Assembly (NCBI RefSeq): GCF_031769215.1
Contig: NW_026781961.1
Location: 1,798,001 to 1,862,000 of the forward strand
DNA: 64,000 nt
Source: Ylistrum balloti
Lineage: Eukaryota
Direction of reading: 5' to 3'
Shown: piece after piece, positions 1 to 57,020 of the stretch
Layout of the letters: every line of letters begins with the position of its first letter
Position numbering within the stretch: position 1 is the stretch's first letter
The notes under the pieces: generated by a model
Seen by the model: the letters and a program-made list of their open reading frames with translations, nothing else
Told to the model about the DNA's origin: nothing
The model's database searches: none
Position numbers and translations under genes: made by a program

Positions 1-371
1 ATATCCTAACAAAGTTTACACAGCTCTTCATGGCCAAATGTTATCTATGAATGACATTTTATCACTGTTTTCATTCCATAAATATCTGTTCTATTCGATA
101 AGATAGACCTTTTTATTCATATCATGTCGCTATCTACATTTCATCATTTCCGAGTGAAATGATGATTTCTTCTTTAATTCTTAAATTAATTGTCTGAATT
201 TCGAGTAAAATAAATTTGAATTTCCTTAAATTGAAACTGTATTCATAATCTGAGAATTACTCTCGATTTTCGTGGGGAATTTGAAAGTTTTCATTGATTT
301 CATGGGTAATTTTAAACCACAAATTTAAATGTCCACAAAACGTTAGAATAAGTATATAATTGAGGTGTTCC

Positions 372-418
372 GTTGGGGGTGGGGTTGGGGGGGGGGGGGG
401 GGGGGGGGGAGGGGGGGC
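372..418 (+). repeat. Poly-G tract (G-quadruplex-prone)
   Basis: About 45 nt that are almost all G. Confidence 0.8.
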
Positions 419-3400
419 AGGACACATTATACAGATAGCCTTAATAATTACCAGGTAATGTAACTGGCTTAATTGCTGGATAAATGTTTTCTGTCCCGTA
501 TATATGTACTGTATATATGTGTATATTGTCCTGAATTGATCTCTACATACCTTTCTCATTATCATAGCTACTTTTTATCCAAAGGTAGCAGCTGTTTTAG
601 ACACAATGAACATAACATACAGTTTTATCTGTTTTCTTATATTTTGAATTCTTCCATCACTTGACATAAACCAGTTTTTACTCATTTTTAAGTTAGCATT
701 TTGAATTCTCAAAAAAAAAAAAAAAATGAAAACAATGCATGGCTGTGACCTAGATTTTAAAATGTTTCATTCATTGATGAAGAACCAATAACAAAGTATT
801 GCTAAGTTATGTTAGGTGTGAAAGGTTACTGTGTCATATGTGTTAATCATGTCTGAAATCAAATTACTTCCTTAATTTAACTTAAACTGATTTAATTAAA
901 ATCAAAATATCTTAATCTTTGTTGACACATTCATTTTAAATAACACGAAGATGAATGTTAAGCAGCGTAATCTGAATGAATTATGTAAATATGAATTTAC
1001 AATAAGAACAATTACCAGTACATGTTTGGTTTTAGAAGGACACTTCCAATGCAATAGAGCGCTGTGTAACATAACTGATATAAGCAGTCAAATTTCACAC
1101 AAAGTGAATCAATTTTACTCGTTGAAACGGTAAAGAACGGGACTTTATCTAAATGTCCAAAGAAATATTGTAATGGTTATTTCTGAAAGGAAACTACAAT
1201 AAAAAAAATCTAAATGGATATTTTGAAAATGAAATTAAAACGGAAAGTAATTGGCCTCTTTGTAAGTTTCGTGAAACAAATCACTTTTGCTTCATTTTTC
1301 AGAAAAACTATGAAAAAACCGAACCATAGAAAATCCTGAATGTCCATCTGAGTGAGTACAGATGAGACACCCAGTACATTTCCTTCCTGGTAAAACAGAT
1401 AAATGATACCTATCAGTTATCATCAAATAAATGAAATTGACCCTTGACCTTGTTATATTGGAGACTATAAACAAAATCTATGGTATAGAAACTTGACTCC
1501 ACAGCACTTAATAGTCACTAGCTTATACTATACAGTCATCAGAGATCCCAGTAAACACGTTTCAGTCCTTGGTGACTATTTAATCACGAATTTGACTTTG
1601 TTAGTTATTAGAAAACCGTTTTTTACACTGATTTCTTTTGGCCCCTTTTTGTCATCAATAGCAAACTCTCTATCAATAAAGAAATAAACGACTAAAATTT
1701 GTTACATGTTTCAATAGAAGGAAGTGAAAGCTTTTTGGCTTGAGTTCCCCTTCCTTCACTCTAAACCAGACAAATTATGTCTGGATTGTTTGCCTGATGT
1801 ACAGACTCAGGCCAGAGAAAGGTTATAATTGCATAACCCAGTGACACACATTCAGTACAGGTAATAAGTCTAAAACACCACAGCATTCCTTTTTGATTTT
1901 GACTGAAGACGTGTTATATACAAACCTGCCCATCAAATCATCAATTTTTCCTGTACTTGTCTTAGGATTTGTGCAGTATTGTATTTATAACATATTTGAA
2001 GTAACCAAGTTTTATTGTGTCTACAGAATATTGTACCTGTATTCACAATTTTTTTAAAAATATTTCTGTACATTGTTTAATTGAAATGTACACACAAAGT
2101 ATTACTAATGTAATTTTCAGAATCTTGAAAATAGTGTATTGTCAATATTACTATAGAGGTGTGGATTGAAAATGTATGATATGATGAATGGATTTATCTC
2201 AGTTTATGGCTGGCATATGAACTTCAATCTTTATTAAATATCATTTTGATTTAATTTAGATTTACAATTCATCTAAGATAATGCATTGTATATGGTAATT
2301 GATTTACTGATTGTCCAGCACTATTGCACATGAGTATGCTGTATATGAAATGTTTACTTTCCGATATTTCTTGTGACACAAGGAATAAAATAATATGAAT
2401 CTGCATGTTGTGTGGTTCATTAATGATCTGTCACCTGATTGAAAAATCATTTGGCCGACATAACGCCTCATGTCTTTTCTAAATTTGAAAATTTGAAAAA
2501 TGAGTTGTAGAACTTCTTTCTACCATAACCTTTTAATATAAAATTATATATATTGTGTACAGCATTTTTTCGCCCCTCATTGACACTTTCGTTAAGAATA
2601 CATCGTAGGTTGTCTGATTGGCTCATCAATATGCAAATAAGATCACCATGTCTCAGAAAAGTACATTAACCTTTGAACTTTAATGATCCAAAAATAGGAA
2701 CAAATTCTGAACATCAAAATTAGATTTTCACTCGTATTAGTAAATTGTGACTGAAATACATTCAATGCCAATCATTGTCAAGTAATATCATGACCATACT
2801 AAACATTTATGTGTGATGTTTCCATGACTACAGCTGTCACTTTCATTGACAAAATGGCCGACATTTTTCCAAAAGAACTTTTCTTCAAAAATGTTTCTTA
2901 TGATTTAACACTGCAAGTGTTACCATCTTATTATATAAAGTGAAACTGAACCATCTTGGGCAAGTCATCAAACCAATGTCAGGTATTTTATCTTATGATT
3001 TTGATAATAAAAAAATGCCATTTGCAAATATTCAAGTATAAGAAACATTTAATTCAAAATTTAAGGTAAACATTGAGAACTTTATCTATTTACGACAGTC
3101 CATATTGTCAAATCCTTATCTACATGAAATTTAAATGATGTCTGTATCAGATTTCCGTCGGTCACTATCACTAACAATTTTAACATTGAATTTGCATCAC
3201 AATATGAAAACAAGCAGGATCTATTAGAAAATTTAGATCTATTATCCAAACTCAAAATGTATTTTTAAGGGATTGTCTGTAATAATTACCATATATATCC
3301 TAGCTGTAATTATAAGCCCACAGGGCTAAGATATTATATATATTTATTTATAATGACTTAATACACACACAAGGAAATAATTGAATCCAACCTGCATGTA

Positions 3401-4589
3401 CATAATGCTGATTATGACAGTGCACTGCGTGACTTCATCTGAAATCTTATCTACTTTCTATAAATATATCAGGAACTTTTCATTTGATATTTTACTACAT
3501 TACATATCAGATACACATGTGAAAATTATAGCTCTGTACAGGTAAATCTTATTGTTTTGTATGGTAAACAACTTTCATCTCATAAACTCAATGAATTAGC
3601 ATCGTATTACTGTCAAAAGGTGACAGAAAAAAAACACTAGATGTAGATATAGAAATGCAGTTCGACTGATCACTTAACTGTTTAGAATATTAAACTATGA
3701 TTGACCCTTTCACCATTACACTCCTAGATCTAAATATATCCTTATTTATAATAATATACAGATATTGACACTTAATTCTCCACACATATAACTGCTGGAA
3801 ACAGTTATAAACTAAATTATATTTTAAGTCAAGTGTGTCATAGGACCACATTCATATCCCATGATTCATGTAGTTGTAGCTGATGAAAGCTTATAAGGAA
3901 AATTTCTATATATCTACTAAGCTACAAGACCATGTCTGCTAATAAGCCCACCCACGTCTATGACTGTTCAGTAACAATACTATTTCAGTCCTTACAACCT
4001 TTGATTCGAATTGTATGATACAAATTATATGTAAATTTATAGGATTACAATGGCAAAAAGATAATAATTATGTCATTCATGAAAATAGATGGTTACGTTA
4101 CATGTTAATACTTTAACACTTTATGTGAGCCATTTTTGTTGTCATGTTGAAAATATTCACCACAATTAGTGCATTACATTTCAAACTATGGTTGTAATTG
4201 ACAGACAGAAGTGGAAAAAGATCTGATATTGTGAAGCATAAAAACTTGACGTAAACTCACTGACTTTCCATACACAAAATTTAAACTATAACAGTGAAAC
4301 CTGTAGATGTAAATGACATCAGATTTCTACATCCTAATTTACCCAAATTTTAGATTTCTGAATCCTAACTTACCCAAGTCCTTGATTTCCCAAACAGAGT
4401 TGATTCCATTCCGTTTCTTTTACTTAATGTGAACAATTTATGTGTAGTATTGCAAGTGTGATGCAAATTATTATAGATAATCCTCAAAACATGTTTAATA
4501 CGTAGATGACGTCCGTGTAAGCTGAGGGGGCACTGATGAATGTGAATATTATCAGCCAGAATATTACATCTTTATCTACACTGGTCTGT

Positions 4590-5180
4590 TAGTAACAGGT
4601 GGTGTACCAGGTATTGTAATCAGATGTACCAGGTATGTAACAGGTGTAGCAGGTAATATAACAGGTGTAACAGGTAGTATAACAGGTAATATAACAGGTG
4701 TAACAGGTAATATAACAGGTGTAACAGGTAGTATAACAGGTGTAACAGGTAGTATAACAGGTGTAACAGGTAATATAACAGGTGTAACAGGTAGTATAAC
4801 AGGTGTAACAGGTAATATAACAGGTGTAACAGGTATTATAACAGGTGTAACAGGTATTATAACAGGTGTAACAGGTATTATAACAGGTGTAACAGGTATT
4901 ATAACAGGTGTAACAGGTAATATAACACGTGTAACAGGTAGTATAACAGGTGTAACAGGTAATATAACAGGTGTAACAGGTAGTATAACAGGTGTAACAG
5001 GTAATATAACAGGTAGTATAACAGGTGTAACAGGTAATATAACAGATGTAACAGGTAATATAACAGGTGTAACAGGTAGTATAACAGGTATTATAACAGA
5101 TGTAACAGGTATTATAACAGGTGTAACAGGTAGTATAACAGGTGTACCAGGTAATATAACAGGTATAACAGGTATAATTA
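4590..5180. repeat. Minisatellite, 21-bp unit ataacaggtgtaacaggt(agt/aat/att) built from 9/12-bp subunits
   Basis: Direct inspection; decayed continuation to about 5570. Confidence 0.95.
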
Positions 5181-5589
5181 TAGGTATTTTAATATCAATC
5201 ACAACAACATCAGAGTAGGTACTTTAATCTATTTAGCTGATTTGGTCTTGATGAGACCCAGAGAAGGTGATACCAGTAGGCGGTACTAAATAAATATTTC
5301 TGCCACGATTTTTCCAACTGCTCAATCACCCTGCATACCCCAGAGTATCCAGCTAACTTACCAATATGAACAGTGTTGGCTCAAATGCCTAAATTCTTCT
5401 AGGTATTTTAACATGTTTAAAGGTGTTACAACAGGTGAACTTGTGTTTTAACAGGTGTTACAACAGGTGTACAGATTTTTAACAGGTGTTATAACAAGTC
5501 TACTAGTCTTATAACAAGTGATCAGTGTTATAACAGGTGTACATGTTTTACAACAGGAGTACAGGTGTTGTATCACTGCACATGGGAAA

Positions 5590-5872
5590 ATAATAACACC
5601 GTACATGATGGAATAATAACACTGTACATGGAATTATAACATTGTACATGGTGGAATAATAACACCGTACATGGTGGAATAATAACAATGTACATGGTGG
5701 AATAATAACTCTGTACATGGTGGTGGAATAATAACACCGTACATGGTGGAATAATAACACTGTACATGGTGGAATATTTACATAACACCGTACATGGTGG
5801 AATAATAACACCGTACATGGTGGAATAATAACACCGTACATGGTGGAATAATAACACTGTACATAGTGGAAT
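5590..5872. repeat. Minisatellite, 23-bp unit ggaataataacaccgtacatggt, about 12 copies
   Basis: Direct inspection. Confidence 0.93.
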
Positions 5873-7636
5873 AAATAAATCATTCCTATTAATTCCTAAT
5901 TAGTTTATAAATTAAGTGTCACTTTTCTTCCGAACATTTTTTATCTTATATTTAGTCAATAACATGAATTGTACATTTTGATATAACAGATCACTGATTT
6001 CTAACTAAAGATATGCATAAAAGGCTTAATTAAAAAGGAAAGTTGAAAATTCAAAATGTATATTCCAAAAGTAAACAAGTAATAGATAAAGAATTTAGTC
6101 GGAAGACAGAATGAACTAGAGAAGGGACAAAAAAGGAAGTGCGGTAATATCATACACTGGAAAAGATTGTGGAGTGACTTCAGTATTACAATAATAAAGA
6201 GCAGAAATTTAATTTAATTACCTTTAACAGTAGTGACAAGCAGCTTTCCATATGCATGTGTAATATTTTTGTAAGAAAATTCTGCATCCTAGATAAACAT
6301 AAAATCCCTCTGTCGCTGTGTTCACGGTTGTATTAAATGTATCCGAACACGTACAGACTTCTTTATCCACAGCAGTAATAGGTAGATACTGGTTGTAGCT
6401 AGTTTCTGTCACATTTAAACACAAATAATTGTACAACAGAAATCTAATCCTTAAACACTATGGTCTCTTCCTGACAGCTGTAAAATCCAGGTCTCTCTGT
6501 GTTTTTAGAACACAATGTTGATACCCTGTGTTATAACAGAGATGTTTCTGTATTTTGTTTTAAATGTCCTTGCTCCTGTAGTGTTAGACCTAAACACTGA
6601 ATCTCATTGTACGTTTTAAGAGTAAATTTTCTCCTTCGTCAAAATCACAAACGTTCTTTGTACATATTATCAGTACAACTGACTTACTGTATAACACACA
6701 CACACACACACGTCCTAGAGTGTGTTAATGACTATAATATATGATGTGTATAATTGCCGTTCTGTGTCCTATACATCCTTACGTGACACTCAGGCATGTC
6801 AACATAGAGGCCCCCCAATCCCATATATACTCTGTCTCAGTCGTCTGAATCACCGGACAATCGTGGGGTTAAGTCTCATCCGTCATTCACTATTCGGATA
6901 TCCTTTGTGAAAAGTTTCTCCTTTCACTGTTGACGTTTGTAATTTTTTTACTTATTTACAGGTAAATAAGTTACAACTAGGATTGGCGATTATATCACGG
7001 GTGTGTGTGTATTTTACAGGTGAACCTTAAGGGTATTTTTAAATCTGAGGTGACTGCACCAGAAGTAAAGTTACCTTGTCGATCAGGTACACCATATCTA
7101 TTTTATATCATTGGCAGACATTAATGATATACAACACCTGTGGCTATGTCATACCCATACCAGTGAAGTAAACACACCCATCAACATATTAAATAAACAA
7201 GGCAAAACATTACTTTTTGTACTCATAGATTCTGTCTAATTTGAAGATTAACACAATCTGCATGTCACGATAATAACAAAATTTTAGTTGATGATTTTTT
7301 TCGTGAGAAACATGCATATGATGATGATCGTGTATGTGATATTTTTAAATGACGTGAACGTGTTTGTACCCGAGAAAGGTGACTATTGAACACACCTACA
7401 GAACTGTTATTACTGTTAATCATAGACATATCAATTTCACAATCACAATCAAAACAATATTTGTTTATGCCTATTTACTCCCACCCAAAAATTCCATGTT
7501 CTTTTTAACTTCATAAGTTTACATTTTATCATTTAAATTCATAAACTAATAAAACTACATTTTAGTCCGGTTTAAGAACATGAAATTTCCATTCCACAAA
7601 CAGTGGTACTGTAAATATCTGGAAATAAGCTTATAC

Positions 7637-7702
7637 CTTGTGATAAGTCCATTCATATTGCTATCAAAAGTAGTTTTCAGAATCGCTAATTCACTAACTG
7701 TC
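7637..7702 (-). CDS. Candidate internal exon (TVSELAILKTTFDSNMNGLITR)
   Basis: ttattacAG acceptor and AG|GTATAA donor, 66 nt open, phase 2/2; linkage to gene A not established. Confidence 0.3.
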
Positions 7703-8555
7703 CTGTAATAAGCCAATCCCTTCACTCTGCAGGGTTAGAATTTGTGCCCTGGATTCCCTGAACCTTCTGGACTTAATGTTCTACAGGATAACAATGGTAC
7801 CTATTACATTATCAAACCATTATGTTTGTCTTCTAATGATCATGCAAATAGCTACAAGGTTTAATTGTAAAGACTGAGTTCTGTTGGGATCATGTTCCAC
7901 AATTATATTAAGACTTTATAAGTGATGGGGTTTACGTTTAATTAAAGTACAGTCTGACAGGAAAGGAAACATCTAATGATGAAGAGCTAACTTCACATTT
8001 ACCTCACAAGTACTTAACGGACTCTTGTTTTATTTTTAAACAATTCATTTTTTGTTATCATGGGCGAATATAAAACTATTAATTTCCCGGGGAGATTTAT
8101 TTTCAATGATTTCATGCGTAATTCCTGATCCAGGAATAATGATATGTCCACAGACTGTCAATCTGGGTATTGATAAAGTAGATTTATAGAGCTAAATATA
8201 ACGAAGATAACAAGTATCCACGAAATAGATATTTAAAAAAAAAAATAAATAAATAAAAAGAGAGCCCAACAAAATTATGCAATATACTGTTAACCTACAT
8301 TTATTAGTAGTAATCTTATTTCAGCTTTTTTTTTTGCTTTTTTTTGAGCAGGACAAAATGGTCTGGTAAAGAACCTGTACATTAAGCACAGCATAATCAT
8401 ACAACAGTTTCTTTAAAACACCCTTTTCAACAAATTTGGGAAAGGGTATTTTTATCTCATTTAGGGAAAAACTGATCATTTGGAAAGGAAATTTTAAGGC
8501 CGGAACAATCTTGGGAATTAAACCATATTATGAAATAAATCCTATTGGGAGTGAG

Positions 8556-8835
8556 CACAGGCACTCGAGGCCAGGATATTATTTTTTAAACGTTGATTTT
8601 TGTTTTAGCACTCATGACTGACGTTATTTAAACGAAATATCAGCAGAATTCAAGTTTATGTGCCGGTTGACAAATCCGAGGTCCACGGTCATTAAAAATA
8701 CACCGTGGACCTCGGATTTGTCAACCGGCACATAAACTTGAATTCTGCTGATATTTCGTTTAAATAACGTCAGTCATGAGTGCTAAAACAAAAATCAACG
8801 TTTAAAAAATAATATCCTGGCCTCGAGTGCCTGTG
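8556..8835. mobile_element. Foldback MITE: perfect 134-bp inverted arms, 12-nt spacer, 8-bp TSD
   Basis: 8556-8689 is the exact reverse complement of 8702-8835; GGAGTGAG flanks both sides (8548-8555 and 8836-8843). Confidence 0.9.
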
Positions 8836-9789
8836 GGAGTGAGGCCCATATTTGGTCCTACCACTAGTAACAGCCTCATCTGTCTCAATGGTCCTTGAGC
8901 CCTCAGCAAAAGCTCTCCTTTATGTAGTTAAAGATATATTACAACAATAATGGTAGATATGTGTCCAAATTTTAAAAATGTGCTAATTCACCAAAAAATG
9001 ATAATGCATTGAAATTATATTAAGCCAAATTCAGCATGTCATTTACAGTATGCAATAACATCATTTTCTACAGGTGACAAAGAATATGTGACTGCATACC
9101 CTGCCAATAACCTGAATGATGAATTTGTACAGTCTGCTAAACCATTATAATGGGCATGATTATACTGATAAAATACCATCAATTTAAGCAATCCTTTAAC
9201 AAGTTATACTTCTGGAACTGTTTCTTGGATATGAATTATCTCCCCTTGACTGTAAAAAAAAGCCTTGACATTCATATTTTCTGAATGACAGAGGTATGAC
9301 TGTTTATATTTACTGAGCAGTACAAACAAAATATGACCATATAAATAACACAAACATATATAATGCTGCTTGGTAAATGATAAAACAACACTTTCAATTA
9401 TGCCAAAAACTGATTTCTAGTTCCCTTCAAAATGAACAGGTTTTTTATCACATTACTAGGATGTGTCATGTCAACTGGGTCCAAATTAATGGATTTATCT
9501 AGATTGATAACATTACATCGTTGTAATTAAGTCTTTACAATACGGATACTACAACTGTATAAATTTGTCAAGATCTCCTGAGCTAACCTTGATTCAGAGA
9601 TCAATATCATTAAACAATTATCAGCTGTATTCAGGAGTGCAACTGACCTAAATAATTAGTTCAGTTAAGACAGCAACTACACAATGGTACAAATGCATTT
9701 GATATTACAATAAAGGAGATCAATTATTAAGAAATATTCTGATTTAATATAAATATAAACTTTATTTATCTTACAACAATTGCAAAACA

Positions 9790-9907
9790 GGGAAAACCTA
9801 CGTGGTCGGACAGGTGACCCCTTACCTTTTCACATCCGTTCCGGGAATCAAACCCCGGTCGGCTAGGTGAAAGGCGAGTGTATTACCACTGCGCCACCCG
9901 ACCACCC
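9790..9907 (-). mobile_element. tRNA-derived SINE (Glu-like TTC loop)
   Basis: A-box TGGCGCAGTGG and B-box GGTTTGATTCC, no acceptor stem; decayed relative at about 46215-46352. Confidence 0.75.
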
Positions 9908-10524
9908 TGATTTCTTATTTCTACGGCTGTCATACACAGAACATGTGCAATATTGGTTTTGTTCTGACAGAACTAATGATGCTCTACTGGTGTAAAATTT
10001 TCTTTAAATGTTTTGATTAATACAAATCTTGTTCTATCTGATTGCATGAGACATAAATTCAAGTTTAACAACATTTAAGTCCTGTTTTGATACATATCTA
10101 GTTCAAGAGAAGAAACAACAAGTTTATTTTCATAACAACAGCCATCTTGAAAGAAGCATCAGAAATTTTTCTCAAATTTAATGAATTTTATATAAGACTG
10201 TGATCCATTTTTACAGCCTTGTCACCATAAACCTTTCTGTTTCTCTTAAGCAGAAGCAGATAGGAAGCAGAAGTTCTTGAAAGGATTTAATCCTCATAAA
10301 AAATAATTAAAAAGAAAAAAAAAAATGAAATATTGTTTTACTTAGGGTTAGGGTAACACACAAATTTCAGGAATATAAAATTCCCATTGAGCTTTATCTT
10401 CAGAAGTCACCAGATTTAATTTCTCCAAGGATTAGAAAAAAAACATTTTTTCAACTTGGGCAGTTGAATAATTCTGTTTACTGACAGTTTCACTGTACAT
10501 CATCCAATCAAATAATAAACAGCC

Positions 10525-10590
10525 TGGCAGGTAAATAGCCCATCTATTAAGTAGTGAGGTCCTTGGTTCGAATCCCAGCAGAAGCAATCA
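10525..10590 (+). mobile_element. Decayed tRNA-derived SINE head
   Basis: GGTTCGAATCCC B-box with a degraded A-box region. Confidence 0.45.
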
Positions 10591-12881
10591 AAGTAATGGA
10601 GACCCATGTTACAAAAAAACAAATATATAGTATTTCATTGTCTTGCATCAAGCAGATTGTGACTTTATGAAAGAATCTTTGTTATAAAATTAAGCTGAAG
10701 TACTCAATATTTCTTCTGAGTTCATCATGAGCACAACAATTAAATTTAAAATAAACAACAGGAAAGACAATTTAGATAAAAACATCTTGTGTATTAATAT
10801 TCCTAACAGAAATATCTCCAGGCAGCTCCAGTTATGATCACAAAAGTGATATATCGGTCATCCTATTTATAGATATAAACAAGAAAAGAAGAGTTCTGAT
10901 TGATTCAAAACAACAATGCATCATATAATGATGTCACCGTCACCATATCACGTCAGCCATGAAAGAATAGCCTAAGGAGAGAGTAGATACACTACCCAGC
11001 CGTGATACTAACGTCGTTCACAGGGATATCAATCATAGAAAATAATGTCTTCTAATCAACAATCAGGCTTTTATCTTAATAGTGAGACAAAAGCTTTTAT
11101 GTTAACACAGTCCACTATCAAGAAATTAACATCAAGCAGCATGTTGTGTTTCATGTATATGTGTGTATCTAAGACATGAAAAAAAGACATTTATCTGTAA
11201 CCTCAAACCAAGAATTTAAATGAAATGTAAATACAGGTTCTATTTTTGGTACACAATAACAAAAAGTGAAAATTTACCATCTGACTGGAATATATAACAA
11301 AGGACAAAGGGGGTATACATCTTTACATAATGTGAACATAAACATTAATACTACTGGTCCCAATGCCAAAACTCACATAAAAAAACAAACTATTACATAA
11401 TTAAAGGCCCATAACTCCTTATGATGACGATCGTATGATCCAATTTCAGAACGTTCTGAATATTGTAAAAGGTTACATTAACATGTCTATACATGGACAA
11501 AGCTAGTACAGCACATTACTATTGTTACTGCAACTCTACACCAACATCCACAAAAACTCTCATATGTTAAATTTGGCAGGTAATGTATGGTTAATTACAT
11601 AAGGAACATGTTCCAAACAGATGATCAGGTTACAGGTGAGACAGGCAAAAGACACTGATTTTGATGGCTGAGATTTTTTCATTTCGTAATATTTATTTTC
11701 TATACATTATACAACATCATCATGGTTTCAAAACAAGCTGTAATTCTGCTTCAGGGCAAATTATGGGTCACATCAAAGAACATATGTGTTGTATATTAAA
11801 GGGAATGATATTTGGGAAGTACAAAACGGCGCAGCACATAGGACCAGGCAAGGGTAGCTTGCATAGTAGGAGTAGGATTTTAAAGAATTTGCTCTGTTTC
11901 CCCATTGGTCCCTGCCCCTCCCATCCCAGGGGGCCAAGACCTTCTGTTTATACAAAATTGATTCTCCTAAATCTAGCAATGCTTCCGACCAAATTAGATC
12001 AAAATCCAATGATTCCTAGAGGAGAAGTAGGATTTTAAAATTTCCTGTTTCAGGCACCTATTCCTCAGCCGTTTGGAGATTGAGACAAATCATTTGTAAG
12101 AAATTTGTTCCCTCTTTCTCCAAGGATACTTCTGACTAAATCTGGTCAAAATCCTCAAAGTCTTCTATAAATACATGTAGAAGGAAGTTTTAGGAGAAAA
12201 GGTTCGTACGGAGGATGGACACTTCGTGCAGTAAGGCATAACTTCACCACTTTGCATAGAGCTGAGGCACTTAAACTACAGATAACTCCTGGTCAAGAAC
12301 ATACATTTAACAATTATGCAGCATATGTACTGAACAATTTTCCAATGTCCATCTCTGTGATTTACCTGTACTGTTACATTAACAGATTAACTGTTATTCC
12401 TGGGGTCGCTGACCACAGCAAAAGGATGGTGACAAACAAGGCTATCATATGTCACTTTTCTAGTATTTATTTGCACAATTAGCAAACATGAGTACCACCG
12501 ACCTAGGAGATGTCATAAACACTTGTTTGGACAAATTTTATATATTTCTGTGAAAGTTTTACATATTGTGTCTGTAAATGATTATAATTTCATTTGAATG
12601 CTTAAAATTGTTTACACTTTTTTTTATAATTTTATAAAGCAAGTAAAATGATCATTGTGTACTGATAGAATCAACATACCTTTGACAGGTACCAGAAATA
12701 TAGAATCTACCTGATTCTGAAGTGAATATTATCTGTATCTCAGAACTATTGGGACTTCAGTTACCTGGGATTGATCTTTATAATCACTCTTCATTTTGTG
12801 ACTTCGTAAACACATCTGTCTCTTTACAAATTTCAATAATATGACCGATAGTTTCTAAACAGCTTATCAACCAATGCATAC

Positions 12882-12945
12882 CAATATGTACTTCTAATAT
12901 CAAAACCGTATTCTTGTCTGTTATGTTGGCATTTTCTAGCAGACC
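12882..12945 (-). CDS. Candidate next exon of gene A (GLLENANITDKNTVLILEVHI-G)
   Basis: ctctacttactgttAG acceptor, phase 0 matches the previous donor; G|GTATGC donor. The frame also stays open to a TGA at about 12785 if the exon is terminal. Confidence 0.4.
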
Positions 12946-14809
12946 CTAACAGTAAGTAGAGAATGAATGATAGTGTCTTCAGTGATAACAAACATATTTC
13001 ACAAGTGTGTCTTTCCCGAGAGCACAGCACCAGTGAAAGATACAAAAAATATTAAACACACAAATGAAATATTTTTGTTATTACTGATGACACTAATAAA
13101 TATTCTATTTATTACATTTTCATTAGCAAAAATAGCCAAATTACTGGCATATTTAGGGCAGAGATAAAAGGTCGAAGCTGATTAAGCTTTTCCTGGACAC
13201 TACTCGTTCATCATAACTTCACAGTACATGTCAATGTAATTTTTTCATATTCACTGTTAATAATGTCACTAACAGACAAAATCTGCTGAGAGAGTTTAAC
13301 CTGTGACAAGTTACTACACAGCTGAAAATATGGCGGCAACCTTAAGCTGTCGCTGTTGATGATAATGAATACTCTTGAAAGGCTAGCACTGCTTTTAAGA
13401 CGTTCGGTTGGGGTTTCGGTTTAATTTCTAATAAGGTAATACCAGGTATGTGTTGCCATGTTTGCTGTCTTCCATGAAAATGAAAGTTTACCATGGAATT
13501 AAAGATTATGTTACTAGTAAACAATCTCTTAAGGTTTCTGGTTTTGTGTTTCTTGTACCGGGCTTTATGATTCGTCAATTTTCTAAATTGATTTGTGTTC
13601 TCTCTTTTCATTGGTGTAAGTCTATGAAAGTGCTAGAGAAAAATAACAAGTTATTTTTCAATAGTGAAAAATAACACTTTTATAAATGAGATATTTCTCT
13701 ATACTTCCCAAACAAGAATGTAATAAAATTGTTTTCTAGAAAGTAAACATGTAAAACCATTTCTATCTATAAAGAAATTTTATCAGCACAATGTCATATT
13801 TTTCCAAGAGAGTTATAACAGCATATTTCATTATATTCCATATCCTGTGTAAATTTGGAAGAAAAGTACATTCATTCCATAATGGTTTGCTTTATACAGA
13901 TGTATCAACATAACTTATAAGCTATTTGTAAAATTTTAAACTGTTAAAGTAAAAGATGTAGAATATGTGAAACATATGCATAAATTTTGGTATTTGTGAA
14001 ACAACCATCGTCACATTTTGTACTTTAGTATCAGACCAGCAGTTCATACTAAATTCAATTGAGTTTGTTTATCCAAATGACAAATTTCAACACTTACACT
14101 TGCAAATTTTTTTACGAGAAATGCTTTTGTCACTTTGATCGCATCTGTACCAATCAACATGTGCGCATGCTGATATCTTTCCACTCATGCGTTACATTAC
14201 ACCTGCCAAGTAAAGCGCGGCAACCGATCACTACACGCTGCACCATCAACAAGACAGCAAAACTATTTACTATTCTGTTGGTTGCTTTATCCTCTGCATA
14301 ACATGATATGCAAAACTGTATTTGTCTATCAACATCATCATAGTTACTGTTAGTGATTTCTTAAAAAAATTTACTTTTCACAACTCCATTCTTTCAGCTT
14401 TTCACCTCTGTATTTACACATATCACAAAAATTGATCTAAACAGTTTAAATTATCAAAAGAAAATCCGTTAAAGGTTTTTAAAAAATGGAATTAAACAGG
14501 TGTTTTGACTGTTCCATGACTACATATGTATTAATGGCTGACTTTCAAGAATCAGTGTACCATGTGTAGTGATATTACATGCAATTCCATCAGCCTCATT
14601 ATTGCCACAAAATATGCATACAAATCACAGCAACTGTAGCATCATATTAGTGGAAAAAAATATATGATAAAAGCTCATGTCATATGTTCTTTCTAATGTA
14701 CACAGAATGGCAAAAGAATTTTTAAAGAAAGAGTCAATATAGTATACTGAAGTGTTGTCACAGGTTTTCGAGTTTGTCTAGATACGGAGGTGATTATGGT
14801 TGTCTTCTA

Positions 14810-15160
14810 AAACCCAGACCTGGGATCTTGGCACCTAATGTTTGATCTTTATTTGTTCTTTAAAAAATGTATCTTTTCCCTTCTTTTTACTTCTTTTCTC
14901 TATTTTCGCTCTTAGTAATACAAAATTTGAACACTCCTTTGCAGAAATAGCAATGATAATATTTAACTGCCAAATTAAAGATGGTCACCTTTCAATAATT
15001 TTTTTCTCTGATCAGTCCCAAAATCAAACCTTCACAACTAGGGACCAAGAGGAACATGCATATGAAATCTGAGTGAGATCCATCCACTATTTCTCACGAA
15101 ATAGCAATATCAAAAATTGTTTAAGGATGGCCAAACAGACTGATGATGGTGAGCTAAAAA
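14810..15160 (+). mobile_element. Internally deleted copy of the 54400-55115 element
   Basis: Shared tgtttgatcttta...ttgaacactcctttgcagaaatagc and gatgatggtg(a/g)gct end. Confidence 0.7.
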
Positions 15161-15759
15161 GTACCAGCTGAGGTCTTAGTGCATGGTATTCATGTTATCA
15201 ACATCAGTGATATTTCAGTAATAGAGATAATTATACTTGGACTATCTTAAAGTAAACAAAATTTCTTATAACATTTTCTTTCTTGGGTAACTTTCAAATC
15301 ACAACAAGTTTGTGATCATAAACACATTTTCTACCACAACAGGAAGAATCTAATTCATTATTACAACTGTTGCTTAGACAAAACATTTAAACAATGTTTG
15401 GATTAAAATATAAACATGTTTTGATTGGCTAACACACCAAGCTTTGACCCGAGGACTAGCTGTTTTAAATAACGCAGTCCAAAGTCATATGTAGATTATT
15501 CATACATCATCAAGGACAATGCTTATGAACAGACAATGAACACTGTTACTATTTATATACAATTCTGTTTGTAGGTCTGATATGTGGTGACACATTTAAC
15601 ACAAATATCAACAACGCTGACAAACAATGAAAACGTCTATATATGAGTGAACTTTGAATGAATGGATGGCAGTAGTTAAGCGAGTCTTTTAGTAAATTTG
15701 GAAAAATTAAATAAAGAAATATTTTAAACAGCAGCCATCTGCTGTGCAACCTAAATCTA

Positions 15760-16150
15760 TTATACTATATCATATCTTATACTATATAAACTTTGTTAAC
15801 CATCATCATCACCTGTATATATTATACTATATAAACTTTGTTAACCATCATCATCGCCTCTATATATTGTACTATATAAACTTTGTTTACCATCATCACC
15901 TCTATATATTATACTATATAAACTTTGTTAACCATCATCATCACCTTTATATATTATACTATATAAACTTTGTTGACCATCATCATCACCTTTATATATT
16001 ATACTATATAAACTTTGTTGACCATCATCATCACCTCTATATATTATACTATATAAACTTTGTTAACCATCATCATCACCTCTATATATTATACTATATA
16101 AACGTTGTAAACCATCATCGTCGCCTCTATATATTATACTATATAAACTT
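15760..16150. repeat. Minisatellite, 42-45-bp unit, about 9 copies
   Basis: tatactatataaactttgttaaccatcatcatcacctcta repeated. Confidence 0.93.
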
Positions 16151-16604
16151 TGTTCATCATCCTCACAACAGCTACTTTTTGCAAATTTGCAAAAGAAAAT
16201 GGCATGTTTACACTATACAACTTTTGCTATACCTTGTATGCAGTCAATTAAAAGTTGAAATTTTGGACAGAACAAAATACACTATTAACAAAAAAATTGT
16301 GGTTTTTAAACGTAACTTTCCATTGGAATAGAAGTTCTTTATAACATAACCAGAAGAAAATTTTATTGTGACATTCTGAAGGCAACACGGTCACGTTTAT
16401 CAGACAAATGACCAGTGTTGAGCGTACCACAACACATTGTTACCATCTGTGTATGTTGTAGTCTGTAATCTGTTTACCATCTCATCACACTATTTTGGAC
16501 CTTAGAATACAAAGGATTATGTTACAGCTAAAAAAGTTGGTTAATGCCTTACCACCTTGTAAATAACGTACGTAAGTGCTAGTAAGCTCTGCATTTGTCA
16601 TTGC

Positions 16605-16638
16605 CTGATGAAGGTGACTGTGTAGTCACCGAAACGTC
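16605..16638 (+). ncRNA. Minimal type I hammerhead ribozyme core of Penelope-like element type (stem I degenerate)
   Basis: CTGATGA-A-GGTGACT-GTGT-AGTCACC-GAAA-CGTC: intact CUGAUGA and GAAA boxes, perfect 7-bp stem II, palindromic ACGU in place of stem III, GUC cleavage triplet. Confidence 0.7.
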
Positions 16639-16689
16639 ACACTCTAATCTTCTACTGGTTGTGTTACAAGAACTTCTATTCTATTTACA

Positions 16690-17202
16690 TTAACAAAATG
16701 AAGGAAATGTTCCAGAACTTACCAATGCTAGAAGGTGTGTTAGGGCGGTGTAGGTGAGATTCTGCCCTTCAGATGTTGAATGTTTATTGTTCATACCATA
16801 TGCAACCGCTGCCGCATTGCATTTTTTACATAAGGGCTTGTGTTCCACAATATGCTGGTGATTTTTCTGAGCATAGACTGTTGTCCTGTTGACCTCACTT
16901 TCACACAAACCACACATCTTATATCCTCTCCACTTTGGAAAGCGCCCAAATGTGAAGCCCTCCTTAATATGATCTCCAGTTGTCTTATGCAGGTTACAGC
17001 GATATTGCTTGTCAATGTTCATCTCTTTCGAGATACTGACGTTCAATTCAGGAAAATTTACACCTCTTGTGGATACTCGTTTTTTAAACTGTTGCTTCCT
17101 TACTTTTGGGACCATTGTTTTTACCATAGGGGACTCATGTTGAGCCTCAATCCCTCGCTCATCTGAGGGATGGTAACTTTGCTTACCAAGACAACCTCCC
17201 AT
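16690..17202 (-). CDS. Uncharacterised 170-aa protein, probable N-myristoylated/palmitoylated with C-x2-C-x24-C-x2-C motif
   Basis: Open frame from a strong-Kozak ACCATGG (MGGCLGKQSY...PSFC*). Acceptor ttttctAG at 17268. AATAAA (minus) at 16362-16367. Confidence 0.72.
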   Translation of the reverse strand: MGGCLGKQSYHPSDERGIEAQHESPMVKTMVPKVRKQQFKKRVSTRGVNFPELNVSISKEMNIDKQYRCNLHKTTGDHIKEGFTFGRFPKWRGYKMCGLCESEVNRTTVYAQKNHQHIVEHKPLCKKCNAAAVAYGMNNKHSTSEGQNLTYTALTHLLALVSSGTFPSFC

Positions 17203-18046
17203 GGTCACCACATTCACAGCAGTCAAACAACAGCTTATATTCAAGTCCAAGGATCACCAATAACTCACTAGAAAATATCCATATTATTCTGAACTCAAAT
17301 TCAAATTTTCAAAAATTTAAAGAAACAAAACATCATAATCTCACCTAGCTACAGTGCTGAGTGTTGTGTCCATCCACAGACGGTTTTACACAGATATTGC
17401 TGGTGGATTAATACAAACTTTGAGATATCAGAAATCTATGTGTACCACATGCACTGATTAAGACATATCCCACATATCACTGTACAACCCAGACCATTAA
17501 AATGTTGCCAAAAATAAAAATTGTCACAAATAGATAGTGTTGATACAGAAACCCATTTATAAACCAATATCCTGGTCAGGCTCTGTTTGTCAGTGAATAA
17601 TACCTGTTATTCTTCCTCACTAAGTCAAAATTCAGGACAGTTTAGAAATTGGATTCAAACTGAGCAATCATACGCCATTGTGTTGTAGATCATCTGTGAA
17701 CGTAATACCTTGGTAAAAACAGATGATTATTGTGTCCGTAGCAAATTAACACAGCTACCCCAGATTAAGTAAAATCCCAGACATCAGTATCCATCAGCCT
17801 TCCTATCTGTTGATTCCGGGGATGACTCTGTCGCTTAATTAGGCGGGTAGCATGTACACATCTACCTGTACCTGATAAATACCTGGTTCATTACAGGTAA
17901 GTCCTACAGGTAAGGTAGCTCACTTGGTGACCCAAAAAGCCAAAGAAAACGACGGAAATTGAAAACCAGCTAGGAAACTCAGAAGTGAGAGCAGGATTAA
18001 TAAATATTTGTACAGACATCAAACGCGACTGGTGAGTTTACAGCTT

Positions 18047-18060
18047 GTTACCATGGAAAC
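18047..18060. promoter_or_regulatory. RFX X-box
   Basis: GTTACCATGGAAAC matches the GTYNCC-AT-RGNAAC consensus and lies just upstream of a candidate minus-strand first exon ending at a GTGAGC donor (17923). Confidence 0.6.
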
Positions 18061-18314
18061 AGATTAATGACAGTGGAGATACTCATTATTGGTGTACATG
18101 ATAGATACCGTTGAATAACACTTATAAATAGCACAGCAATGAAGTATTCTCAATAATTCCATATGTATCAACGTGTAGGAATCATATGGTGTTATTTTTT
18201 TGCCTTGATCAATGATAAGTATAATACATCATTAACATCAAGGACTCAAACTGAATAGGAGGTACCTCTCAACTCAAGGTAAGCTAAACACATGTAATTA
18301 GGAAGGATGTTTGG

Positions 18315-18850
18315 AAACAGGAAAGGGCATTGGTCAAAGTAAGGGAAGGGCAAGAAAGGGTGGGGCTGTAATAGGAAGCAGGGCAGTAAAGGGCAAGGCA
18401 GTGTGGGGCAAAGCAGAGAGGGCATTGGTCAAGGTAAGGGCAGGGCAGGAAAGGGAAGGGCATTGGTCATGGTAAGGGCAAGGCAATGTGGGGCAAAGCA
18501 GAGAGGGCATTGGTCAAGGTAAGGACAGGAAAGGGAAGGGCATTGATCATGGTAAGGGCAAGGTAGTGTGGAGAAAAGCAGAGAGGGCATTGGTCAAGGT
18601 AAGGGCAAGGCAGTGTGGGGCAAAGCAGAGAGGGCATTGGTCAAGGTAAGGGCAGAGTGGGACAGGAAAGGGCATCGGTCATGGTAAGGGCAAGGCTGGG
18701 AAGAAAAGAGCAAGGCATGGAAGGTCATGGGAGGTAAGGAAATGGCAGGCTGGGGCTGTAATGGGAGAAGGGAAGGGCACGGCAGTGTGGGGCAAGACAG
18801 GAAAGGGCATTGGTCAAGGTAACGGCAGGGCAAGCCAAGGTGGGGCTGAC
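18315..18850. repeat. Purine-rich minisatellite, about 48-bp unit
   Basis: gggcattggtcaaggtaagggcaaggcagtgtggggcaaagcagaga repeated with variants. Confidence 0.9.
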
Positions 18851-19684
18851 ATAAGGAATCAATAAATAAGATACTAAATGTGATGTTTGCTTATTGAAAG
18901 TGTATATATGAAGAAAAAATCAAGCAAAGCTAGCTTACATTTTTCTGTCAAGCTACTTAAAGTTACCTGGTATATCATTCATGTATCACTGATTTGAAGG
19001 TAAAGTATATACATGTATATAATTTTTGCATATTATCAGGAATGAATCTAAAGGACAGGCATGAAAGTGTAGCTTCTTAATAATCATTTTAATTAGTTAT
19101 TAACATCTAGTTAAAACAACATAATTTAATTATAAGTTAAAACATATGATGCTTGCCTGCATGGAAAGCTTTGTCGTTTACCATGAACATAAATGCCAAA
19201 GCATTAGATACTTCATTGCTCAATCTACTTTCGGAAAAACTCAGAAATGTTTCACGTATGTGTAAAAGTAACATATAATGTACACATGTACATATGCTTG
19301 AAATGTTGTGATTGGAGTCAATTCAATTTTCACAATAATCAATAAATGAATACACATGTATATATTGATTCAATGGTCCATTAATGAAGTAGTTTTAGAG
19401 TTTAAATGTGAAATAATTTGAGTTGTATTACCCCTATTTGGTTTTGCCATGAATAATCTCAGACGATAAAAACATAGGGACAATGTAGATTTCTATATAA
19501 GTTATCATTCCGTTCAATATCTACTCTGAAAAAAGTGTCAAAGTCTTTCCTTGCAATCATATTTTTTCAACCCATGATCAGACGATTTGTGGTGACATAT
19601 TTTTCATTTCATGATAAAATTTAAATAAGAAGAAGTGAGACTGTAATGATATATTGTATGATAATTGTTTCCTTATTAAAGCTC

Positions 19685-19890
19685 AGCAAAATGCATCAAG
19701 AAAATACCCACATGGCAACATAATCATAATGCAAACACATATTCCATAAAACCAGGGCAACATATGAACAAAAGAAACATTTATGCAGTGATTCCTGAAA
19801 AAGCACAAGGAAAATAAGACCAGGTGTTCTGAAAGAGTAAGTGTCTTCTGCTTCATCGCCGACACCCGACACGTAAACCTTGTTCAATCC
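19685..19890 (+). mobile_element. Dispersed repeat with an inverted relative at about 62570-62630
   Basis: accaggtgttctgaaagagtaagtgtcttctgcttcatcg is similar to the reverse complement of 62573-62625. Confidence 0.5.
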
Positions 19891-20254
19891 AAGTAAGTAA
19901 TGTCACGTTCTCAAATGACAACAAGGTATATAACAACCGAACCAACAGGCAAACAAATTATGAGCATCAAATTTGTCCAGCTTCATGTCTTACAAAGAAA
20001 TAGAATATTTCTCAATGAGATCACTATAATGACCATTACCGGGGTACTAACAAATCCTTGGGATGCAGAATTCTGAATGATTGTCTTGTGGTCAATTTTT
20101 CGTTGGTTCAAATTCATGACAAATTGAAGCAAGAAAAAACATAAAATGAGGGTAGGTAATCTAAAAAATGAAAAATGGTATAATATAGCTACCTAGGTAA
20201 GAGACAGCTTTATTAGATTTATTATAGCAGGCTTTATTGCTGTTTATTTAACCC

Positions 20255-20575
20255 CTCCTATTATGAAATTATTCAACCTCTTCTTTTATGAAATTATTTT
20301 TACCAGTCCTTTTATGAAATTATTTTTAACCAACGTTTTATGAAATTGTTTTATCCGTCCTATTTTGAAATGATTTTTAACCCTTTTTTATGAAATTATT
20401 TCATCCCTCCTTTTATGGAAGTTATTTAACCCCTCCTTTTATGAAATTCTTTTCCCTTCCTTTATAAAATTATTTCACCCCCTCCCCCCATTTTATGACA
20501 TTATCTTACCCCTCCTTTTATGAAATTATTTTGACCCTCCTTATATGAAATTATTTTACCTCTCCTTTTTATGAA
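20255..20575. repeat. Degenerate minisatellite, about 27-bp unit ccctccttttatgaaattattt
   Basis: Direct inspection. Confidence 0.85.
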
Positions 20576-21744
20576 ACTCAGCTTATTTCGACCAAGACTC
20601 TGAACATTATGATATTGTACATCAATCGTATTTAGGCCAAATTGTGAAAGAGCAGTGAAAAGCATACTTGTACCAAACATCTCTTTTAATCATTAAGCCT
20701 AAATATTTGATATGAATTTCTATTGATTTATCAACAGGTATGAGCAAGTGAAGAAACCAGTTTCCTGAGTAAGACAATATCTCATACACGAAATCCTTTT
20801 TTCTTTTGGTATTAAAGAAATCATGCTATTACCAACATAAAGTTTTCTCATCATTTATAAAAACACTTTCAGACAAGAAAGATGAAAAAAATTGTTCTAA
20901 GATCCCTGAAATTTCTTTCTGTATGCAGTTAAACATCTTATAGACAGCAGCAAAACATCCCCTGACAGAAAAATACACACTACCAAATCCAAACAGTATC
21001 CAAGTTTAAACTCTCACCCAATACACCTTAGTAAACTTCTTGTTGCTTACAAATAGACAAATTTACAAATACCGTATGAAGTTTATCTAAATTGAACCCA
21101 AGGATACCTTTTATGAATTTAATGTTTTTTCTAGCATTTATACAAATTGTAATCTAGATCAACACTATATATGTCAAAGCAAGGTATCAGCTGAAAGGTC
21201 CTGGCCTCAACATCAATCACAGAAATTATAGCCATGATAACAGACAAAACTAGTAAGAATACTTTTAGCCGTGAAATTAAAAATTTGAAGTATGTAATTC
21301 AAAATGTTGTTTACTTAAAGCTGAAATATATTTTATCTGATGACCCTAATAGATCTGTGCTAAAAATAGCACTATACAATCATTTGCTTGTAAGTGGTGA
21401 GAAGTTTCAGTGAAGGGTGTTTAATCTTTAGGGTATTTTTTGTATAGTGTTGGTAGTTGACACCTTAAATGATATAAATTCTATAAATCATATACAGGTA
21501 CTTATCTATGTAAGTAAACCTTATCTAGTCAATACTGCAGAGCCTGTGTGAACTGTGTCATCATTCTTTCAGATTTATTGTAACCCATTGATATACATGT
21601 CTGGATTAATATCATGATAAAAATCAATGATCACATGATCACCTAATAAACATGGAGGTCTATAAATAGCTTTTGTATGTACTTTTATCATAATCAATAT
21701 CTGAACTATGATGAAGAGTCTGTGAGATTTACCAACATCAATAA

Positions 21745-56830: not shown

Positions 56831-57020
56831 GTACGATATTTTGGTTTTAAATTGTTCTACATTTCTGGAAGACATAAGATCACGACTTTACATTCAATAA
56901 ACAGACATGTTCATCATACAGTGAATGTTTGTTATTTGACGGAAGTGTATATGAATGAAGGGACGTAACTCTAACCGGAAGTCAAAATATAAACGGACTA
57001 CGGATCAAATTTACGGAAGA
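56831..57020 (-). promoter_or_regulatory. Putative NPHP3 promoter and non-coding first exon
   Basis: Strong GTAAGT donor at 56830 (minus). ETS-like CGGAAG(T) motifs at about 56940, 56975-56982 and about 57013. Coding exon 1 has an acceptor upstream of its ATG, so a 5' UTR exon is likely. Confidence 0.5.

What the first reader, a model, noticed from the sequence alone, without database searches (positions are those of the whole stretch)
16690..18060. Nested, X-box-driven gene for a small lipidated Cys-motif protein, a candidate new ciliary protein near NPHP3
Seen: a 170-codon ORF in one exon with a strong Kozak start, MGGCLGK N-terminus, a polybasic stretch (KVRKQQFKKRVSTR) and C-G-L-C-x24-C-K-K-C. 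It has an acceptor at 17268, candidate UTR exons (17345-17435 and 17924-about 18040), a poly(A) signal at 16362 and a perfect GTTACCATGGAAAC upstream. Known: Gly2 with a nearby Cys signals myristoylation plus palmitoylation; X-boxes bound by RFX factors mark ciliary genes; NPHP3 and cystin are myristoylated UNC119 cargoes sent to cilia. Inference: this is an uncharacterised membrane-anchored, possibly zinc-binding ciliary or sperm protein, sitting inside an intron of gene A. I do not recognise the family.
Basis: partly seen in the sequence, partly recalled or inferred. Interest (0 to 1): 0.72.

Follow-up and report, generated by a model that had tools for sequence, protein, structure and literature searches.

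The report
First coding exon of scallop IP3 3-kinase
The "new small ciliary gene" is the first protein-coding exon of the scallop's inositol-trisphosphate 3-kinase gene; it encodes a bivalve-wide N-terminal piece with a fatty-acid anchoring signal and four conserved cysteines, and an RFX-type X-box recurs upstream of it.

Summary
The sequence features are real: ATG at 17202 (minus strand), MGGCLGK start, basic stretch, CGLC-x24-CKKC and an X-box at 18047-18060. The gene model is wrong. The conserved coding sequence ends at 16723, at a phase-0 splice donor (GT 16722-16721) found at the same codon in every relative. The last 10 codons, the stop at 16690 and the AATAAA at 16362 are intronic.

Profile searches put the exon at the N-terminus of annotated bivalve "inositol-trisphosphate 3-kinase homolog" proteins (Crassostrea virginica XP_022324279, Saccostrea echinata, Mya arenaria). 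An oyster mRNA contig shows it spliced to the IPK catalytic exons. In the window those exons lie beyond coordinate 1, so the intron is at least 16.7 kb. No host "gene A" was found. NPHP3 lies upstream on the same strand, but was not seen next to the gene within the flanks examined in an ark clam or two oysters.

- **Conserved across bivalves:** Gly2 with Cys3/4 (an SH4-like Myr/Palm motif), a basic cluster and the four Cys; dN/dS is 0.09-0.15 among oysters.
- **X-box:** consensus matches recur upstream in several relatives, so RFX control is plausible. A ciliary role is untested.
- **Limits:** Both AlphaFold models were poor.

This is a lineage-specific variant of a known enzyme, of modest interest.

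The parts
18047..18060 (.). X-box-like palindrome (GTTTCCATGGTAAC on the minus strand), 845-858 nt upstream of the ATG; candidate RFX site at the promoter
   Evidence: perfect match to GTHNYYATRRNAAC; chance about 0.02 in this 2-kb upstream region. Perfect matches also lie upstream in L006, L008 and C. virginica L015, and a 13/14 match in T. granosa.
17924..18040 (-). Candidate non-coding first exon (donor GT at 17923-17922); start unknown; contains an upstream ATG
   Evidence: Sequence only. Oyster mRNA L017 shows that at least one non-coding exon precedes the ATG exon. Not tested in the scallop.
17345..17435 (-). Candidate second non-coding exon (AG at 17437-17436, donor TAG|GTGAGA at 17344)
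   Evidence: Sequence only. Unverified.
16723..17267 (-). First coding exon of the IP3 3-kinase homolog: acceptor AG 17269-17268, ATG 17202, 160 codons, phase-0 donor GT 16722-16721
   Evidence: Similarity to L001 runs exactly 17207-16718. The donor is conserved in 5 loci and used in oyster mRNA. hhalign against IP3K N-termini gives probability 99.8%, E 2.8e-29.
17185..17202 (-). MGGCLG: N-myristoylation (Gly2) plus palmitoylation (Cys4) motif; relatives read MGC(V/F/L/C)x(S/T/A)
   Evidence: M1 and G2 are invariant and C3 nearly so. Every complete family member whose N-terminus was recovered, and the window ORF, fit the PROSITE myristoylation pattern.
17065..17106 (-). Basic cluster KVRKQQFKKRVSTR (residues 33-46)
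   Evidence: Relatives carry basic clusters at the matching place.
16819..16941 (-). Conserved core FPKWRGYKMCGLC ... CKKC (F88-C128): two CxxC pairs, putative zinc knuckle pair
   Evidence: F88, P89, Y94, C97, C100, C125 and C128 are invariant in 13 sequences; the loop varies from 16 to 38 residues. No Pfam or PDB family matches. The fold was not resolved.
16723..16749 (-). Conserved hydrophobic end of the exon (TALTHLLAL; family consensus TAFANLLAL), which continues as TALDL... in exon 2 of relatives
1..16722 (-). Intron after the first coding exon, running off the window (at least 16.7 kb). It includes the read-through tail and stop (16722-16690), AATAAA (16367-16362) and a 45-bp satellite (15772-16165)
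   Evidence: tblastn of oyster IP3K P0018 finds only exon 1 in the window. The matching intron is 20 kb in T. granosa. Tails after the donor differ by frameshifts among near-identical relatives.

Best explanation
Window 17267-16723 (minus strand) is the first coding exon of the scallop ortholog of the bivalve 'inositol-trisphosphate 3-kinase homolog' (IP3K/ITPK, IPK superfamily). Its 160 codons encode a lineage-specific N-terminal targeting module. The module has four parts: an SH4-like Met-Gly-Cys motif (myristate on Gly2, palmitate on Cys3/4), a basic cluster, a conserved FPKW(K/R)GYKMCxxC...CxxC four-cysteine core (probably a small zinc-binding knuckle pair), and a hydrophobic TAFANLLAL segment. 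A phase-0 donor at 16722 splices the exon, across an intron of at least 16.7 kb, to catalytic exons that lie beyond the start of the window. Inferred mechanism: dual acylation plus the basic patch tether the kinase to the inner face of the plasma (possibly ciliary) membrane. There it converts Ins(1,4,5)P3 to Ins(1,3,4,5)P4 and shortens local IP3/Ca2+ signals. Vertebrate ITPKA and ITPKB use an F-actin-binding N-terminus for placement instead. An X-box about 850 nt upstream, next to a likely non-coding first exon, suggests RFX-driven transcription. Shown: homology, exon boundary, purifying selection, the oyster mRNA join, and motif recurrence. Inferred: lipidation, zinc binding, membrane placement, RFX control and any ciliary role.
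For: The HMMER search of 1.84 billion representatives finds only a small family, all starting MGC. The profile search plus cluster look-up place it in XP_022324279, C. virginica inositol-trisphosphate 3-kinase homolog. A search with the oyster N-terminal region adds full-length IPK-domain proteins from Saccostrea echinata and Mya arenaria. hhalign of the unnamed group (including the window) against IP3K N-termini matches end to end, probability 99.8%, E 2.8e-29. BLASTP of the window against P0018 gives E 3e-12. G|GTA.G sits at the same codon in five loci. DNA similarity stops exactly there in two independent species pairs. Oyster mRNA contig L017 joins ...LLAL to TALDL... and on to the IPK exons. 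In T. granosa, exons 2-9 lie 20-30 kb downstream of the exon. dN/dS is 0.09-0.15 among oysters; for window against L001, pN is 0.28 and pS 0.82. The acylation pattern is met in all complete members. X-box recurrence.
Against: The scallop catalytic exons are not in the window, so the join is inferred from orthologs. No full-length scallop protein with this exon appeared in the searches. AlphaFold gave no confident fold for the module (pLDDT 44.6 and 33), so zinc binding is only a pattern. X-box positions vary widely (-191 to -4460), no transcription start is mapped, two loci lack a good match, and the S. echinata match lies in a tandem repeat.
Confidence: 0.88

Rival explanations
1. One reading: a stand-alone nested gene that makes a 170-aa lipidated Cys-motif protein, ending at the stop at 16690 and polyadenylated after AATAAA at 16362. 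This could also exist as a minor intron-retention isoform of the kinase gene.
For: The ORF stays open 10 codons past the donor to a stop, and an AATAAA lies 330 nt downstream. ORF callers, and the T. granosa annotation, produce similar short products.
Against: The tail after LLAL is not conserved. It differs by frameshifts among near-identical cluster members. The donor consensus is kept in all loci. RefSeq models and an oyster mRNA splice here to IPK exons. AATAAA is common in DNA of 33% G+C.
Confidence: 0.06
2. The X-box at 18047-18060 is a chance palindrome, and the gene is not RFX-regulated or ciliary. The N-terminal module simply places a broadly expressed IP3 3-kinase at membranes.
For: The window-wide count is not significant (7 of 100 shuffles). 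Distances to the ATG vary from 191 to 4460 nt. L001 and L004 have no good match. The S. echinata match sits in a satellite. No paper in the held library links IP3K to RFX or the X-box.
Against: Perfect consensus matches lie within 2 kb upstream in 3 of 6 loci, each with chance about 0.013-0.02. The L006 and L008 sites keep the X-box plus an adjoining CAGGTG while the flanks no longer align. There is a 13/14 palindrome in T. granosa and a perfect match in C. virginica.
Confidence: 0.45
3. The ORF derives from a mobile element or an HNH/endonuclease VII-type nuclease remnant.
For: There is a weak Pfam Endonuclease_7 hit (E 0.05). There is a weak hit to a CxxC-repeat plus HNH protein, P0006 (E 5.6e-5). 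Another first-stage note proposes a Penelope-type hammerhead at 16595-16645.
Against: The Pfam hit is below threshold (14 against 23.6 bits) and seen in only 1 of 13 members. The exon is single-copy in the window and orthologous across bivalves inside a cellular kinase gene. No look-alike was found elsewhere in this genome's notes. Rfam finds no hammerhead in 14000-21000 at E up to 1.
Confidence: 0.01

Closest known systems
Bivalve 'inositol-trisphosphate 3-kinase homolog' (C. virginica XP_022324279, 453 aa; Saccostrea echinata, 447 aa; Mya arenaria IP3KH-like, 465 aa)
   Same: The N-terminal exon matches end to end: MGC start, basic cluster, FP.W.GYKMCxxC...CxxC core...LLAL end, and the same phase-0 donor.
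   Different: Only 21-25% identical to the window exon overall. The window has Gly3-Cys4 instead of Cys3. The scallop catalytic exons are not in the window.
Vertebrate ITPKA, ITPKB and ITPKC (IP3 3-kinases, Pfam IPK PF03770)
   Same: In the bivalve orthologs, the same catalytic family sits behind a variable N-terminal region that sets location. PMC11000326 describes N-terminal actin-binding and calmodulin-binding regions in animal IP3Ks.
   Different: No detectable sequence similarity in the N-terminus. The vertebrate enzymes use F-actin binding, not an acylation motif with four Cys. No paper in the held library describes a lipidated IP3K.
SH4-type dual-acylation motifs (Src-family kinases such as Fyn and Lck; G-alpha i/o)
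   Same: Met-Gly-Cys start with a small residue at position 6, followed by basic residues. The family consensus MGCVQS closely resembles the Fyn N-terminus (from my own knowledge, not tested here).
   Different: This is a convergent short motif, not homology. Lipid attachment is unproven here.
X-box/RFX-regulated ciliary genes and myristoylated UNC119 cargoes (NPHP3, cystin)
   Same: An X-box consensus lies upstream, and the protein has a myristoylation motif. NPHP3, with its MGTGGS start, lies about 15 kb upstream on the same strand.
   Different: No expression, localisation or UNC119 data exist. NPHP3 was not found beside the gene in the other bivalve loci within the flanks examined. RFX factors also drive non-ciliary genes.

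Membership tests
Inositol-trisphosphate 3-kinase (IP3K/ITPK; IPK domain PF03770) | IPK catalytic domain encoded by the same gene | not testable with these tools
   tblastn of oyster P0018 finds only exon 1 in the window. The catalytic exons must lie beyond coordinate 1. The orthologs have PF03770.
Inositol-trisphosphate 3-kinase (IP3K/ITPK; IPK domain PF03770) | Exon homologous end to end to the first coding exon of annotated bivalve IP3K homologs | tested here: met
   hhalign probability 99.8%, E 2.8e-29, columns 1-157 against 1-147. BLASTP E 3e-12. Profile search E 1e-19 to 5e-57.
Inositol-trisphosphate 3-kinase (IP3K/ITPK; IPK domain PF03770) | Same phase-0 splice donor after ...LA(L/M), joined to the TALDL...WIQLAGHPG exon | tested here: met
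   The donor consensus is present in the window and four other loci. The join is seen in oyster mRNA L017 and in the genome. Use of the donor in the scallop itself is untested.
SH4-like dual acylation (N-myristoyl Gly2 plus S-palmitoyl Cys) | Met-Gly start fitting G-{EDRKHPFYW}-x(2)-[STAGCN]-{P}, with Cys at position 3 or 4 | tested here: met
   All complete family members and the window ORF fit. M1 and G2 are invariant and C3 nearly so.
SH4-like dual acylation (N-myristoyl Gly2 plus S-palmitoyl Cys) | Lipids actually attached, and membrane localisation dependent on Gly2 and Cys | not testable with these tools
   Needs metabolic labelling and mutant localisation.
RFX/X-box-regulated (ciliary) genes | X-box consensus close to the transcription start | tested here: inconclusive
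RFX/X-box-regulated (ciliary) genes | X-box kept in orthologous promoters | tested here: inconclusive
   Perfect matches in the window, L006, L008 (within 2 kb, chance about 0.02 each) and C. virginica at -4460. A 13/14 match in T. granosa. None in L001 or L004.
RFX/X-box-regulated (ciliary) genes | Expression in ciliated cells or localisation to cilia | not testable with these tools
   No expression data were reachable.
Endonuclease VII / HNH-type zinc module (PF02945) | Score above the Pfam gathering threshold and present across the family | tested here: not met
   14 bits against a 23.6 cut-off, in 1 of 13 members only.
Zinc ribbon or zinc knuckle domain | Four invariant Cys as two CxxC pairs, folding into a metal site | tested here: inconclusive
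   The four Cys are invariant. AlphaFold pLDDT was 44.6. No PDB sequence match below E 0.3.

The most novel reading that the evidence does not exclude
Bivalves have given their IP3 3-kinase a conserved, dually acylated, zinc-binding N-terminal module, and they transcribe it from an RFX/X-box promoter. The enzyme would then be a membrane-anchored terminator of IP3/Ca2+ signals in ciliated cells (gill, larval velum, sperm), linking inositol-phosphate metabolism to control of ciliary beating.
Probability: 0.15. Interest if true: 0.6.

Novelty: new variant of a known kind. Interest (0 to 1): 0.33.

Why it matters
It removes a false "new gene": the ORF is the N-terminal exon of a known enzyme, and that exon is already part of oyster RefSeq models. 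What remains new is modest but real. Across bivalves (scallop, oysters, ark clam, soft-shell clam) the IP3 3-kinase carries an undescribed N-terminal module with a Fyn-like acylation motif and four invariant cysteines, under purifying selection. Vertebrates use an actin-binding region at that position. A lipid-anchored IP3 3-kinase would show a different way of placing IP3 removal next to its site of production. The recurrent X-box gives a testable link to ciliated-cell expression. The work also flags an annotation error: in Tegillarca granosa the gene is split into KUTeg_001941 and a separate IPK gene.

Tried and rejected
- There is no scallop RNA evidence for the acceptor at 17268, the UTR exons or use of the donor.
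- **Family and structure-sequence searches:** Pfam, NCBIfam and PDB sequence searches of the ORF and of the family profile gave nothing significant. I rejected the Endonuclease_7 and DUF1677 hits as sub-threshold.
- **Structure prediction:** AlphaFold on the 8-sequence N-terminal alignment gave pLDDT 44.6. On full-length oyster IP3K with 4 sequences it gave pLDDT 33. Neither was usable, so I ran no fold search.
- **RNA families:** Rfam on 14000-21000 gave only a chance sRNA hit and no hammerhead.
- **Promoter scan:** the bacterial promoter/terminator scan is irrelevant for an animal genome.
- **Oyster 5' UTR:** aligning the first 118 nt of oyster mRNA L017 to the oyster genomes, to place the start next to the X-box, scored no better than a reversed control. 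Upstream regions of the two oyster genomes share only repeats.
- **Host 'gene A':** T. granosa fragments against the window and Pfam on ten large flanking ORFs gave nothing. I did not submit a full six-frame Pfam scan of 146 fragments, to avoid a very long typed call.
- **Run accessions:** a paper search for the accessions of the unnamed relatives found nothing, so the species of P0001-P0004 and P0017 remain unknown.

Full report
**Observation.** On the minus strand an ORF runs from ATG 17202 to a stop at 16690 (170 codons).
- The start context is ACCATGG and the product begins MGGCLGK.
- It has the basic stretch KVRKQQFKKRVSTR (residues 33-46) and CGLC-x24-CKKC (C97-C128).
- It is the longest ATG ORF in the 64-kb window. 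A 170-codon ORF arises in only 3 of 100 block shuffles.

**It is a real coding sequence, but not a complete gene.**
- A word-indexed search found one relative, P0001 (179 aa, 50% identity). An exhaustive HMMER search of 1.84 billion representatives added four more small ORF products (P0002-P0005), all starting MGC.
- Against P0001's contig, non-synonymous difference (pN) is 0.28 while synonymous sites are saturated (pS 0.82).
- DNA similarity to that contig runs from 17207 to 16718 only. That is from 5 nt before the ATG to the bases G|GTAAG after codon 160.
- An independent species pair, L006 and L008, shows the same sharp limits.
- All five loci read G|GTA(A/G/T)G(T/G) at this codon, although the "amino acids" encoded there differ (S, R, G, S, C).
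- Among near-identical cluster members the tails beyond this point differ by frameshifts while the body barely changes.
- This is the signature of a phase-0 splice donor at 16722-16721. The last ten codons, the stop and the poly(A) signal are intron.

**What the exon belongs to.**
- A profile of the exon (alignment A3) recovered further clusters. A cluster look-up showed that one of them contains XP_022324279, "inositol-trisphosphate 3-kinase homolog" of Crassostrea virginica (P0018, 453 aa).
- In that protein ...FANLLAL is followed by TALDLSAPASDALVKNRKNAWIQLAGHPG and an IPK domain (PF03770, E 8e-35).
- A search with the oyster N-terminal region, allowing full-length candidates, found the same architecture in Saccostrea echinata, in an oyster transcript-derived protein (P0039) and in Mya arenaria.
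- hhalign of the unnamed group including the window (A6) against the IP3K N-termini (A7) aligns end to end with probability 99.8% and E 2.8e-29. BLASTP of the window exon against P0018 gives E 3e-12.
- Contig L017 is a spliced oyster mRNA. It joins the exon to eight IPK exons of the C. virginica and S. echinata genomes, at exactly the conserved donor. It also shows a non-coding exon spliced in about 54 nt before the ATG.
- In Tegillarca granosa the exon (annotated alone as KUTeg_001941) lies 20 kb upstream of the TALDL exon, and seven more IPK exons follow. That annotation splits one gene in two.

**In the window.**
- tblastn with the oyster protein finds only exon 1 (16962-16717, E 4e-9). The highly conserved second exon is absent.
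- The intron therefore spans all of 16722-1 and continues off the window, so it is at least 16.7 kb.
- I did not build a joined exon model of the scallop gene.
- Earlier notes of this scan call the genome a scallop. I did not verify the species.

**Context.**
- NPHP3 is on the same strand upstream. Its N-terminal exon starts at 55470 (MGTGGSF...), and TPR exons run down to about 33200.
- No NPHP3-like sequence lies within 10 kb upstream or 35 kb downstream of the exon in T. granosa. No gene is called within 10 kb upstream in either oyster genome.
- Synteny with NPHP3 was therefore not seen in those flanks. I found no evidence for a host "gene A".

**The module.** Thirteen sequences were aligned.
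- Invariant residues are M1, G2, F88, P89, Y94, C97, C100, C125, C128, L158 and A159. C3, W91, G93, T152 and L160 are nearly invariant.
- Every complete member fits the PROSITE N-myristoylation pattern and has Cys at position 3 or 4. The consensus MGCVQS resembles Src-family SH4 motifs (my own knowledge).
- A basic cluster follows at an equivalent position in all members.
- The loop between the two CxxC pairs varies from 16 to 38 residues, as in small zinc knuckles or ribbons.
- No Pfam, NCBIfam or PDB family matches, and AlphaFold gave no confident fold.
- dN/dS for the exon is 0.09-0.15 among oysters.

**The X-box.**
- Window-wide, the C. elegans-type consensus is not significantly enriched (3 hits at 2 sites against 0.8 expected; 7 of 100 shuffles do as well).
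- In the 2 kb upstream of the ATG, a perfect match has a chance of about 0.02 per locus. Perfect matches occur in three of six loci: the window at -858, L006 at -1383 and L008 at -658.
- The L006 and L008 sites share an adjoining CAGGTG while their flanks no longer align. This looks like one conserved element, not two independent ones.
- T. granosa has a 13/14 palindrome at -191, and C. virginica has a perfect match at -4460.
- L001 and L004 have no good match. The S. echinata match lies in a satellite.
- RFX control is therefore plausible but unproven. RFX factors also drive non-ciliary programmes.

**Literature.**
- The held library has no paper on a lipidated IP3 3-kinase or on RFX/X-box control of one.
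- A 2024 survey of IP3K evolution sampled no molluscs. It describes N-terminal calmodulin-binding and actin-binding regions in animal enzymes (PMC11000326).

**Verdict.**
- The features noted are real and conserved. The interpretation as a new, nested, stand-alone ciliary gene is not supported.
- It is the first coding exon of the scallop IP3 3-kinase homolog (confidence about 0.88).
- The residual novelty is a bivalve-wide, apparently undescribed acylation-plus-four-Cys targeting module, and a possible RFX link.

**Limits.**

Noticed in passing
L003 (Tegillarca granosa CM056597.1) 10001-41925: The GenBank annotation splits one IP3 3-kinase gene into KUTeg_001941 (186 aa, with a doubtful 14-residue upstream exon and intron read-through at the end) and a separate 321-aa IPK gene. 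The TALDL exon at 31511-31597 and the exon at 33524-33673 fall between the two coding parts.
   Followed up: partly
window 55201-55470 (-) down to about 33200 (-): NPHP3 lies on the minus strand. Its N-terminal exon starts MGTGGSF (its own myristoylation-type start). A coiled-coil exon is at 53703-53996, and TPR exons (Pfam TPR_NPHP3) run from 38639 to about 33200. No X-box with one mismatch or fewer lies in 55000-58500.
   Followed up: partly
window 15772-16165: A 45-bp tandem repeat (8.8 copies, 92% match) lies inside the IP3K intron. It creates the 195-codon plus-strand 'ORF' rich in His runs, which is not a gene.
   Followed up: no
window 18389-18723: A G-rich minisatellite (47/80/127-bp periods) lies 330 nt upstream of the X-box. 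It generates many short overlapping ORFs on both strands.
   Followed up: no
window 20244-20576: A 25/51-bp tandem repeat of about 13 copies (TTATTTTACCCCTCCTTTTATGAAA).
   Followed up: no
window 16595-16645: Another first-stage note proposes a Penelope-type minimal hammerhead here, antisense to the supposed 3' UTR. The stretch is intronic on my reading. Rfam at E up to 1 found no hammerhead family in 14000-21000.
   Followed up: partly
window 4576-5202 (-) and 5548-5883 (-): Long ORFs made of short peptide repeats (PVTPVILPVT...; CTVLLFHHVRCYY...). These are tandem DNA repeats inside the intron and give no sign of a gene.
   Followed up: no
window 2818-2831: The second match to the X-box consensus in the window (GTAGTCATGGAAAC, minus strand), deep in the IP3K intron.
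   Followed up: no
L016 (Saccostrea echinata) 7000-8800: A tandem array upstream of the oyster IP3K gene. Its units carry X-box-like AT-rich near-palindromes and match a repeat far upstream in C. virginica (L015 283-427).
   Followed up: no
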